Counted from the stretch's first letter, positions 32,616-32,942 are shown. The stretch: DNA of 64,000 bases from Macrostomum lignano (GCA_002269645.1 NIVC01002404.1:62001-126000); one strand, 5' to 3'. Notes: generated by a model from the sequence alone, not told the origin. Numbers and translations: made by a program.

Positions 32616-32722
32616 CTACCAGGTGCAGAACTTCAGCAGGCATGGGGTGACGCCGTAAGAGCGGCGATGCATGACGGGACCGGCTGGTGTTGGCTCTGCG
32701 GACTGCAGCCGACTCTCGTGAA

Positions 32723-32753
<31 letters not shown>

Positions 32754-32942
32754 ATAGTCCAGCAACATCTGCCGCAGCAGAACCCGGCGCATGGCCAGCT
32801 CGTCACTTTGGCGCAGATCGGGCTCACCGTAGCGCATCCGGTCGCTTGCAACTTCGTCGTAATCAGCGACCGACATGCAGCGAACTCCGTGCAAGGCTGT
32901 TAGGCCAAGCAGCAGCGTCAGTGTAATGCCGATTGGTGTCAT
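32616..32942 (-). CDS. Neuropeptide precursor (108 aa) with a C-terminal cyclic peptide SYGVTPCLLKFCTW, urotensin-II/somatostatin-like
   Basis: Signal peptide MTPIGITLTLLLGLTALHGVRC, acidic and polyQ pro-region, dibasic RR site, then a C-x4-C peptide at the C-terminus. A 5'UTR intron is likely (donor gtatgt ~33045, acceptor tgatag ~32952). Confidence 0.85.

What the first reader, a model, noticed from the sequence alone, without database searches (positions are those of the whole stretch)
32616..32942. Candidate urotensin-II/somatostatin-family neuropeptide with a W-to-L change in the pharmacophore
Seen: signal peptide, pro-region with a Q10 tract, RR cleavage site, then SYGVTPCLLKFCTW-stop. 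Established: vertebrate urotensin II has the ring CFWKYC, and lophotrochozoan UII/somatostatin-related peptides have a C-x-W-K-x-C ring in which W-K is the receptor-binding core. Inference: CLLKFC keeps the ring size, the Lys and the aromatic residue but replaces Trp with Leu, and has a Trp after the ring. This may be a divergent, little-described flatworm member, informative about the origin of SST/UII/allatostatin-C signalling.
Basis: partly seen in the sequence, partly recalled or inferred. Interest (0 to 1): 0.75.

Follow-up and report, generated by a model that had tools for sequence, protein, structure and literature searches.

The report
Candidate flatworm ring-peptide hormone gene
A small transcribed gene of the flatworm Macrostomum lignano looks built to release a 14-residue disulfide-ringed peptide that resembles the mollusc/annelid relatives of urotensin II and somatostatin but lacks their hallmark tryptophan, so it is a plausible yet unproven first flatworm member of that hormone family.

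Summary
Window 32616-32942 (minus strand) is a 108-aa ORF with a signal-peptide-like N-terminus, a Q10 tract, RR93-94 and then SYGVTPCLLKFCTW-stop. The window comes from Macrostomum lignano. The ORF is GenBank 'hypothetical protein BOX15_Mlig030219g1', a model built from RNA-seq with a spliced 5'UTR exon. It is the only one of six frames with gene-like codon usage. The longest identical stretch between the two genome copies (917 bp) coincides with this transcription unit.

The similarity to protostome somatostatin/urotensin-like (SSRP-like) peptides is real but weak, and it is confined to the cleavage site and mature peptide:
- BLASTP gives 6/12 identities in the same register as Aplysia apUII (E 0.003 for that single comparison).
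- hhalign gives P 0.0018 but only 15% probability.
- Among random peptides that already have RR-x6-C-x4-C, 0.6-2% score as well.

The candidate fails two family features. It lacks the universal Trp-Lys motif, and it lacks both coding-region introns. No orthologue, receptor, expression pattern or peptide evidence could be obtained, and no paper mentions the sequence.

Verdict: a plausible cyclic-peptide prohormone (about 0.5). True homology to the SSRP-like/UII family has a probability of about 0.25-0.3.

The parts
33045..33155 (-). Annotated 5' exon. It is untranslated in the real protein but translated in the 'partial' GenBank model P0001. It contains a TATAAA at 33152.
   Evidence: The N-terminal 40 aa of P0001 are the translation of this exon spliced to STK-MTPIG. 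It has no in-frame ATG.
32952..33044 (-). 93-nt intron in the 5'UTR, GT...AG, 27% GC
   Evidence: Splice junction reconstructed from P0001. It has a canonical donor (GTATGT) and acceptor (TGATAG) on the minus strand.
32616..32942 (-). Intronless CDS of the 108-aa precursor, including the TAG stop at 32616-32618
   Evidence: GC is 61% and GC3 72%, against 42-45% in the UTRs. It is the only frame of six with a positive codon-usage log-likelihood (+19.6 bits; z=5.0 against shuffles).
32877..32942 (-). Signal-peptide-like N-terminus (residues 1-22; cleavage possible after G19 or C22)
   Evidence: Hydrophobic core I4-L17, with a 9-residue Kyte-Doolittle maximum of 2.49 (2.9-3.2 in mollusc SSRP-like precursors). 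The -3/-1 rule is satisfied at G19 and C22. This is heuristic only, since no SignalP was available.
32784..32789 (-). Internal dibasic site R52-R53, a possible additional convertase site
   Evidence: Sequence. Cleavage is inferred.
32724..32753 (-). (CAG)10 encoding Q64-Q73 in the pro-region
32661..32666 (-). Dibasic site R93-R94, immediately N-terminal of the predicted mature peptide
   Evidence: Sequence. hhalign aligns it with the basic processing site of mollusc precursors.
32619..32660 (-). Predicted mature peptide SYGVTPCLLKFCTW (S95-W108), with a free-acid C-terminal Trp and no amidation signal
   Evidence: 6/12 identities with apUII' and 6/10 with the oyster precursor. Predicted disulfide form: [M+H]+ 1615.765.
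32625..32642 (-). Ring C101-L-L-K-F-C106 (four residues between the cysteines)
   Evidence: [quoted passage not shown]
32351..32615 (-). Inferred 3'UTR, running to the end of the block that is identical between the two genome copies. It has an AATATA at 32367 and a 10+10 palindrome near 32368-32388.
   Evidence: The boundaries are inferred, not measured.
32351..33267 (.). 917-bp block with no differences between the two genome copies (contigs NIVC01002404.1 and NIVC01001317.1)
   Evidence: It is the longest identical run in 10.6 kb aligned at about 97% identity. About 18 differences would be expected at the average rate, and the next longest run is 528 bp.

Best explanation
This is a real, transcribed Macrostomum lignano gene (Mlig030219) encoding a 108-aa secretory prohormone. 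Shown: the ORF, its frame, the spliced transcript model, and its conservation between the two genome copies. Inferred: (1) the N-terminal approximately 19-22 residues direct the protein into the secretory pathway and are removed; (2) a prohormone convertase cuts after R93-R94, and possibly after R52-R53; (3) the C-terminal 14-mer SYGVTPCLLKFCTW is released with a free-acid Trp; (4) C101 and C106 form a disulfide, giving a six-residue ring that presents Leu-Lys-Phe on a turn; (5) the peptide acts as a neuropeptide or hormone on a rhodopsin-type GPCR, with the ring Lys as the key basic contact, as in somatostatin and urotensin II. The peptide is most similar to protostome SSRP-like/UII-like peptides (Aplysia apUII, Conus and Capitella SSRPL1). 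It may be a strongly derived member in which Trp became Leu and the C-terminal P-x-x-P-W tail shrank to T-W. I put that homology at about 0.25-0.3 overall, roughly half of the 0.5 I give to the prohormone mechanism.
For: Gene reality. The only database hit is an M. lignano GenBank protein on two contigs. The GenBank annotation of this assembly is derived solely from RNA-seq transcript assemblies (PMC5730564). The 5'UTR has a canonical 93-nt GT-AG intron on the minus strand. CDS GC is 61% and GC3 72%, against 27% in the intron and 42-45% in the UTRs. It is the only frame of six with positive codon-usage LLR, z=5.0. The longest identical run between the diverged genome copies (917 bp, about 18 differences expected) coincides with the transcription unit, whereas the neighbouring enzyme CDS has 8 differences in 960 nt. 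Prohormone architecture. Hydrophobic N-terminus, acidic pro-region, RR, and a single Cys-ring peptide at the extreme C-terminus in a 108-aa precursor. This is the same layout and size as Aplysia apUII, whose peptide is residues 93-112, and as oyster and Octopus precursors of 100-104 aa. Peptide similarity. BLASTP against apUII' gives 6/12 identities, ungapped and in the same register, E=0.003 for that single comparison. Against the full oyster precursor the best local match is GVTPCLLKFC/GVALCLWKVC, 6/10, E=0.034. hhalign's only match aligns cleavage site plus peptide, P=0.0018. Given RR-x6-C-x4-C-x2, only 0.6-0.9% of random peptides and about 2% of own-composition shuffles score as well. The deorphanised Capitella peptide also ends in a free-acid Trp.
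Against: The Trp-Lys motif shared by all accepted members is absent. The CDS lacks both the phase-0 pro-region intron and the phase-1 intron at the start of the mature peptide; I confirmed both in the oyster gene. The pro-region has no similarity beyond composition. hhalign probability is only 15%. No homologue was found in 5.8 billion clusters or 1.84 billion representatives, and metagenome pattern hits are all chance matches. The signal peptide was judged only heuristically, has no basic n-region and is less hydrophobic than in mollusc precursors. The annotation pipeline also produced a junk CDS next door, a translated microsatellite, so the gene model proves a transcript, not a protein. The identical block includes the intron and UTRs, so gene conversion could explain it as well as selection could. 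There are no expression, peptidomic or receptor data. The comparison was chosen after the fact from many possible peptide families.
Confidence: 0.5

Rival explanations
1. It is a lineage-specific small secreted protein that is not a signalling peptide, for example a gland, adhesive, seminal-fluid or antimicrobial product. The RR sites are not used, or the fragment has another role, and the resemblance to SSRP-like peptides is coincidental.
For: The precursor is an orphan: no homologue in any search. The pro-region shows no family signal. The family hallmark WK and both introns are missing. The similarity is only at the 1-2% level under the conditional null. A polyQ tract is unusual for a compact prohormone. 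From my own knowledge, M. lignano has many rapidly evolving lineage-specific secreted genes.
Against: There are exactly two Cys in the mature region, spaced as in a known hormone ring. They sit immediately after a dibasic site at the extreme C-terminus of a roughly 100-aa precursor, with the S-x-G register and terminal Trp of accepted family members. Structural secreted proteins seldom have this layout.
Confidence: 0.27
2. There is no functional protein. A transcribed locus containing a CAG repeat happens to carry an open frame, and its prohormone-like features arose by chance.
For: Such ORFs arise at 0.017 per 64 kb in simulated sequence, which means hundreds per genome. The same annotation calls a translated (ATAG)n microsatellite a gene 5 kb away. 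The region is GC-rich, with long ORFs in several frames. No published table mentions the gene.
Against: Only the annotated frame has gene-like codon usage (+19.6 bits against -4 to -73 in the others; z=5.0). There is a sharp GC contrast between CDS and intron/UTRs. The first ATG of the spliced transcript opens the ORF. The transcription unit is the most conserved stretch between the two genome copies.
Confidence: 0.15
3. It belongs to another Cys-ring neuropeptide family: allatostatin-C, vasopressin/oxytocin, MCH or CCAP.
For: It has a disulfide ring and, like ASTC and MCH, a C-terminal position after a dibasic site. MCH also has a Trp directly after its ring (my own knowledge).
Against: The protostome ASTC loop always has six residues, whereas this one has four. 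From established knowledge: VP/OT peptides lie directly after the signal peptide, are amidated and are followed by neurophysin; the MCH ring has eight residues; the CCAP ring has five and is amidated. There is no Pfam hit.
Confidence: 0.04

Closest known systems
Protostome SSRP-like peptides: Aplysia apUII (SGGMSLCLWKVCPAAPWLIS), Conus Cr-SSRPL1, Capitella Ct-SSRPL1 (pQASSGAQICIWKVCPPTPW) (Romanova 2012 PMC3493602; Koch 2022 PMC9048919)
   Same: A precursor of about 100 aa with a signal peptide, a pro-region, a basic cleavage site and a single peptide at or near the C-terminus. A C-x4-C ring with an aliphatic residue at ring position 1 and Lys at position 3. An S-x-G start with six residues before the first Cys. 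A Trp after the ring, and a free-acid C-terminal Trp as in Ct-SSRPL1.
   Different: Ring position 2 is Leu, not the invariant Trp. Position 4 is Phe, not Val. The P-x-x-P-W tail is reduced to T-W. The CDS has no introns, against phase-0 plus phase-1 introns in the family. The pro-region is unrelated and contains a Q10 tract. No flatworm member of the family has been reported.
Vertebrate urotensin II / URP (ring CFWKYC; human UII ETPDCFWKYCV, from my own knowledge)
   Same: The ring size is the same, with Lys at ring position 3 and an aromatic residue at position 4. A Thr-Pro precedes the ring. The peptide sits at the extreme C-terminus of the precursor after basic residues.
   Different: The F-W of the ring is replaced by L-L. 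Pfam's urotensin model is not hit, though it also misses accepted mollusc members. UII/URP genes carry several introns.
Nematode NLP-56 (as described in Koch 2022, citing McKay 2022)
   Same: It is a protostome Cys-ring peptide that resembles SSRPs but has lost the Trp of the WK motif (FK instead). It is an orphan in cluster analysis.
   Different: It comes from a different phylum, and its substitution (Phe) retains an aromatic residue. The authors treat its family membership as uncertain, which is a direct precedent for caution here.
Allatostatin-C
   Same: It is a C-terminal disulfide-ring peptide after a dibasic site, and its receptor is related to somatostatin receptors.
   Different: In protostomes the ring always has six residues, commonly with Asn and an FxP motif. 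Here the ring has four residues and neither motif.

Membership tests
Protostome SSRP-like / UII-type peptides | Disulfide loop with four residues between the two Cys | tested here: met
   C101-LLKF-C106.
Protostome SSRP-like / UII-type peptides | Trp-Lys at ring positions 2-3 (C.WK.C), shared by all reported members | tested here: not met
   The candidate has Leu-Lys (CTG AAG), so Lys is kept and Trp is lost. The motif is invariant in 11 family sequences examined here and is stated as universal.
Protostome SSRP-like / UII-type peptides | Aliphatic residue (I/V/L) preceding the WK position | tested here: met
   L102.
Protostome SSRP-like / UII-type peptides | N-terminal extension rich in Ser/Gly, in register with the ring | tested here: met
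   S95 and G97 match the invariant S1 and G3 of the published peptides, with six residues before the first Cys.
Protostome SSRP-like / UII-type peptides | C-terminal extension with prolines and a single Trp | tested here: inconclusive
   A single Trp is present (W108, the last residue, as in Ct-SSRPL1). The invariant P13 and P16 are absent and the tail is only two residues long.
Protostome SSRP-like / UII-type peptides | Precursor architecture: signal peptide, pro-region, basic site, one peptide copy near the C-terminus, about 100 aa | tested here: met
   108 aa against 100-104 aa (oyster, Octopus) and 112 aa (Aplysia). The signal peptide was judged heuristically.
Protostome SSRP-like / UII-type peptides | Gene structure: phase-0 intron in the pro-region and phase-1 intron at the start of the mature peptide | tested here: not met
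   The candidate CDS is intronless; its only intron is in the 5'UTR. Oyster control: phase-0 intron after aa 43 and phase-1 intron in the first Gly codon of the peptide. Koch reports loss of the second intron in one annelid.
Protostome SSRP-like / UII-type peptides | Statistically detectable sequence relationship to family precursors | tested here: inconclusive
   hhalign P=0.0018 but probability 15%. BLASTP single-comparison E is 0.003 and 0.034. The conditional null gives 0.6-2%. The pro-region gives z between -0.9 and +1.1. There are no database-level hits.
Protostome SSRP-like / UII-type peptides | Conservation of the peptide in related species | tested here: inconclusive
   No orthologue was found in the protein collections or metagenomes. 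Flatworm transcriptomes are not demonstrably covered by these collections.
Protostome SSRP-like / UII-type peptides | Cognate SSTL1-type GPCR in the same genome that is activated by the peptide | not testable with these tools
Protostome SSRP-like / UII-type peptides | Neuronal or neuroendocrine expression, with the processed peptide detectable | not testable with these tools
   No paper or supplement held mentions Mlig030219.
Vertebrate urotensin II / URP | Invariant CFWKYC hexapeptide | tested here: not met
   The candidate ring is CLLKFC: 3 of 6 identical, plus aromatic-for-aromatic at position 5. There is no Pfam hit, but this is uninformative because mollusc members are also missed.
Allatostatin-C | Six-residue Cys loop in protostomes | tested here: not met
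   The loop has four residues.
Vasopressin/oxytocin | C-x4-C nonapeptide directly after the signal peptide, followed by G-K-R and a neurophysin domain | tested here: not met
   The ring is at the extreme C-terminus, with no amidation signal and no neurophysin. The family definition is from established knowledge.

The most novel reading that the evidence does not exclude
This is the first platyhelminth member of the bilaterian somatostatin/urotensin-II-type (SSRP-like) peptide family. It has replaced the otherwise universal pharmacophore Trp with Leu, shortened its tail and lost both coding introns. That would imply co-evolution with a flatworm SST/UT-like receptor, and it would show that motif-based searches (C.WK.C) systematically miss derived members.
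Probability: 0.27. Interest if true: 0.7.

Novelty: new variant of a known kind. Interest (0 to 1): 0.45.

Why it matters
The relationship between deuterostome somatostatin/urotensin II, protostome SSRP-like peptides and allatostatin-C is still debated. Flatworms are absent from the published survey (Koch 2022), and recent flatworm reviews list no such peptide. A flatworm member would extend the family's distribution within Spiralia. One lacking the Trp of the Trp-Lys core would be a natural experiment on the pharmacophore that underlies somatostatin drugs. M. lignano is transgenic- and RNAi-tractable, so ligand, receptor and phenotype could all be tested. If the peptide turns out to be unrelated, it is still an undescribed candidate cyclic peptide hormone in a model flatworm, which is a modest addition.

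Tried and rejected
Database and family searches that found nothing useful:
- Pfam scan of the precursor: only a sub-threshold Nro1 hit. The negative is uninformative because accepted mollusc SSRP-like precursors also hit nothing.
- Word-indexed search of 5.8 billion clusters and exhaustive HMMER over 1.84 billion representatives: only the protein itself.
Concatenating the three published peptides worked and returned 12 mollusc precursors but no flatworm.
- A profile of 14 ring variants with W restored and similar changes (A3): no candidate at all, not even the protein itself, so the tool evidently treats alignments differently.
- Exact look-up of the 108-aa product on transcript contigs: not on record.
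- Degenerate DNA pattern for C-L-x-K-F-C-T-W-stop in metagenomes: six hits, all chance matches with stop codons just upstream.

Literature:
- Gene ID Mlig030219 in full text and in supplements of five M. lignano papers: absent.
- The peptide string in all held papers: absent.
- McVeigh 2009 could not be read.
- Planarian and flatworm catalogues and reviews list no SST/UII-like gene. There is only old immunoreactivity work.

Analyses that gave no support:
- Pro-region similarity to mollusc precursors: none.
- The bacterial-type promoter/terminator scan is irrelevant for this eukaryote.

Readings rejected:
- ASTC, VP/OT, MCH and CCAP, on ring size or peptide position.
- The plus-strand 103-aa ORF and the other overlapping ORFs, on splice orientation and codon usage.

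Full report
**1. The observation**

Window 32616-32942 on the minus strand is an ATG-to-TAG ORF of 108 codons. It translates to MTPIGITLTLLLGLTALHGVRCMSVADYDEVASDRMRYGEPDLRQSDELAMRRVLLRQMLLDYQQQQQQQQQQLHESRLQSAEPTPAGPVMHRRSYGVTPCLLKFCTW.
- a hydrophobic N-terminus (I4-L17), with -3/-1-compatible cleavage sites after G19 or C22;
- a (CAG)10 tract encoding Q64-Q73;
- R93-R94;
- a 14-residue tail with C101 and C106 separated by four residues, ending in Trp and then a stop.

In Markov simulations of the window, an ORF with a hydrophobic N-terminus, a dibasic site and a C-terminal C-x4-C tail arises 0.017 times per 64 kb. That is rare for one window but implies hundreds in a genome of several hundred Mb. 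The pattern alone is therefore not evidence of a gene.

**2. What the locus is**

The only protein in 5.8 billion clusters that matches is 'hypothetical protein BOX15_Mlig030219g1, partial [Macrostomum lignano]'. It is 148 aa (PAA58177.1 / PAA69494.1) and lies on two contigs of assembly GCA_002269645.1. The window is identical to one of these contigs.

The extra 40 N-terminal residues of the GenBank model are a translated 5' exon (window 33045-33155). It is spliced over a 93-nt GT...AG intron (32952-33044) onto ...STK-MTPIG. That exon has no in-frame ATG, so MTPIG is the first start. The GenBank annotation of this assembly is built only from RNA-seq transcript assemblies (Wudarski 2017). The model is therefore evidence for a spliced minus-strand transcript.

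It is not evidence for a protein. The neighbouring 167-aa 'gene' is a translated (ATAG)n microsatellite.

Independent support for coding:
- The CDS is 61% GC (GC3 72%), against 27% in the intron and 42-45% in the UTRs.
- Against codon usage learned from four Pfam-supported ORFs in the window, the annotated frame is the only one of six with a positive log-likelihood: +19.6 bits against -4 to -73, z=5.0 against nucleotide shuffles.

The two genome copies differ at 207 events over 10.6 kb. The longest identical run (917 bp, window 32351-33267) coincides with this transcription unit. About 18 differences would be expected there, and the next longest run is 528 bp. The neighbouring fatty-acid hydroxylase CDS has 8 differences in 960 nt. 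Because the identical run also covers the intron and UTRs, gene conversion is as good an explanation as selection. I count it only as mild support.

**3. Comparison with the proposed family**

Koch et al. 2022 define protostome SSRP-like peptides by these features:
- a four-residue Cys loop;
- a universal Trp-Lys, preceded by I/V/L;
- a Gly/Ser-rich N-terminal extension;
- a C-terminal extension with prolines and one Trp;
- a gene with a phase-0 intron in the pro-region and a phase-1 intron at the start of the mature peptide.

They report the family in molluscs, annelids, brachiopods, rotifers and Xenoturbella. Flatworms are not mentioned at all. A nematode peptide with FK in place of WK (nlp-56) is treated as doubtful.

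Published mature peptides are Ct-SSRPL1 (pQASSGAQICIWKVCPPTPW, free-acid Trp end), Cr-SSRPL1 (SGGMSLCLWKVCPAAPWLVS) and the MS-verified Aplysia apUII' (SGGMSLCLWKVCPAAPWLIS). The last is residues 93-112 at the C-terminus of its prohormone.

The candidate aligns to apUII' without gaps from its first residue: S-Y-G-V-T-P-C-L-L-K-F-C against S-G-G-M-S-L-C-L-W-K-V-C. That is 6/12 identical, with E=0.003 for that single comparison. It matches five of the ten columns invariant in the three published peptides: S1, G3, C7, K10 and C12.

Using the three peptides as a concatenated query, I retrieved 12 mollusc precursors. The complete ones are 100-104 aa.
- A profile of nine of them gives a single hhalign match to the candidate. 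It aligns DRQTR-GGVALCLWKVCP with VMHRR-SYGVTPCLLKFCT, with P=0.0018 but probability only 15%.
- BLASTP of the two full precursors again picks GVTPCLLKFC/GVALCLWKVC: 6/10 identical, E=0.034.

Much of such a score comes from the two Cys and the basic site. I therefore scored 200,000 random peptides constrained to x6-RR-x6-C-x4-C-x2. Of these, 0.6-0.9% reach the candidate's score, as do about 2% of shuffles of its own residues. The pro-regions show nothing beyond composition, with z between -0.9 and +1.1. This is common among neuropeptide precursors but adds no support.

**4. Features that fail**

- Ring position 2 is Leu (CTG), not Trp.
- The tail lacks both prolines.
- The CDS has no intron. 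In the oyster orthologue I confirmed a phase-0 intron after residue 43 and a phase-1 intron inside the first Gly codon of the mature peptide.
- Pfam finds nothing. It also finds nothing in accepted mollusc members, so that negative carries no weight.

**5. Search for relatives and prior description**

- An exhaustive HMMER scan of 1.84 billion representatives finds only the protein itself.
- A 14-row profile with W restored and other ring variants finds no candidate.
- The exact 108-aa product is not on record on any transcript contig.
- A degenerate DNA pattern for the ring, tail and stop gives six metagenome matches, all chance hits.
- No held paper or supplement mentions Mlig030219 or the peptide string.
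- Flatworm neuropeptide catalogues and a 2026 review list no somatostatin/urotensin-like gene. There is only 1980s immunoreactivity work.

Conservation, expression, processing and receptor therefore remain untested. The collections searched are not known to contain flatworm transcriptomes.

**6. Most likely mechanism**

Shown: a transcribed, spliced gene with a coding-like frame. It encodes a protein with a secretory-type N-terminus, two RR sites and a C-terminal two-Cys 14-mer.

Inferred:
- the signal peptide is removed;
- a convertase cleaves after R93-R94;
- SYGVTPCLLKFCTW is released with a free-acid Trp (no Gly for amidation);
- a C101-C106 disulfide forms, giving predicted [M+H]+ 1615.765;
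- the peptide acts on a peptide GPCR, with the ring Lys as the key basic contact, by analogy with somatostatin and urotensin II (established pharmacology, not tested here).

I give this prohormone reading about 0.5. Within it, true descent from the SSRP-like/UII family is about 0.25-0.3 overall.

Rival explanations:
- a lineage-specific secreted protein with a coincidental resemblance (0.27);
- a non-functional ORF in a transcribed CAG-repeat locus (0.15);
- another Cys-ring family (0.04), rejected on ring size and position.

**7. Novelty and verdict**

The protein exists in GenBank only as a hypothetical protein, and nothing about it is published in the held literature. If the family assignment holds, it is a new variant of a known kind: the first flatworm SSRP-like peptide, with the pharmacophore Trp replaced. 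The evidence now is a short, in-register but statistically marginal similarity. Two defining features fail and there is no comparative or experimental support. Interest is moderate (0.45). The decisive tests are orthologue mining in Macrostomum transcriptomes, in situ expression, targeted peptidomics and receptor assays.

Noticed in passing
window 26249-28981 (array); annotated gene at about 27777-28277 (-) = L001 14879-15379: A 2.7-kb (ATAG)n microsatellite. The GenBank annotation calls a 167-aa protein inside it that reads IYLSIYLS..., which is a spurious CDS from a transcribed repeat. Annotated genes in this assembly therefore prove transcripts, not proteins.
   Followed up: yes
whole window, e.g. 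59059-60737, 24477-25723, 3647-4974, 11588-12418, 10096-10842, 1982-2955: The window is packed with long tandem arrays (41 TRF rows). Examples are a 19-mer x86, an 18-mer x69, a 34-mer x39 and (CTAA)n x208. This fits the published description of the M. lignano genome as rich in simple and tandem repeats.
   Followed up: partly
window 16391-16460 (-): An Rfam tRNA match at 29.5 bits, just above the gathering score of 29. ARAGORN does not call it. It is probably a tRNA-derived element or pseudogene.
   Followed up: partly
window 29920-30879 (-): A single-exon fatty-acid hydroxylase ORF (Pfam E 2e-22). Between the two genome copies it has 8 nucleotide differences, 6 at third positions, and 1 amino-acid change. 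This pattern suggests purifying selection on both duplicates.
   Followed up: partly
window 1312-1950 (-) and 7200-8630 (-); 49687-50169 (+): ORFs with WD40 repeats and with NACHT/NWD1-like winged-helix domains, probably exons of one NWD1-like NLR-type gene. There is also a leucine-rich-repeat ORF.
   Followed up: no
window about 32368-32388: A perfect 10+10 palindrome, TTGTAGAATT-C-AATTCTACAA. It sits at the distal end of the inferred 3'UTR, next to an AATATA and the end of the block that is identical between the genome copies. It may mark the polyadenylation region.
   Followed up: no
L001 vs L002 (contigs NIVC01002404.1 and NIVC01001317.1): The two copies are collinear at about 97% identity over more than 10 kb but break down outside that region (52% shared 31-mers over 20 kb). 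This fits the partial genome duplication reported for the DV1 line.
   Followed up: partly
tool behaviour: The word-indexed protein search given an alignment returned no candidate at all, not even the window's own protein, although the first row of the alignment is an exact substring of it. Negative results from alignment queries should be read with care.
   Followed up: no
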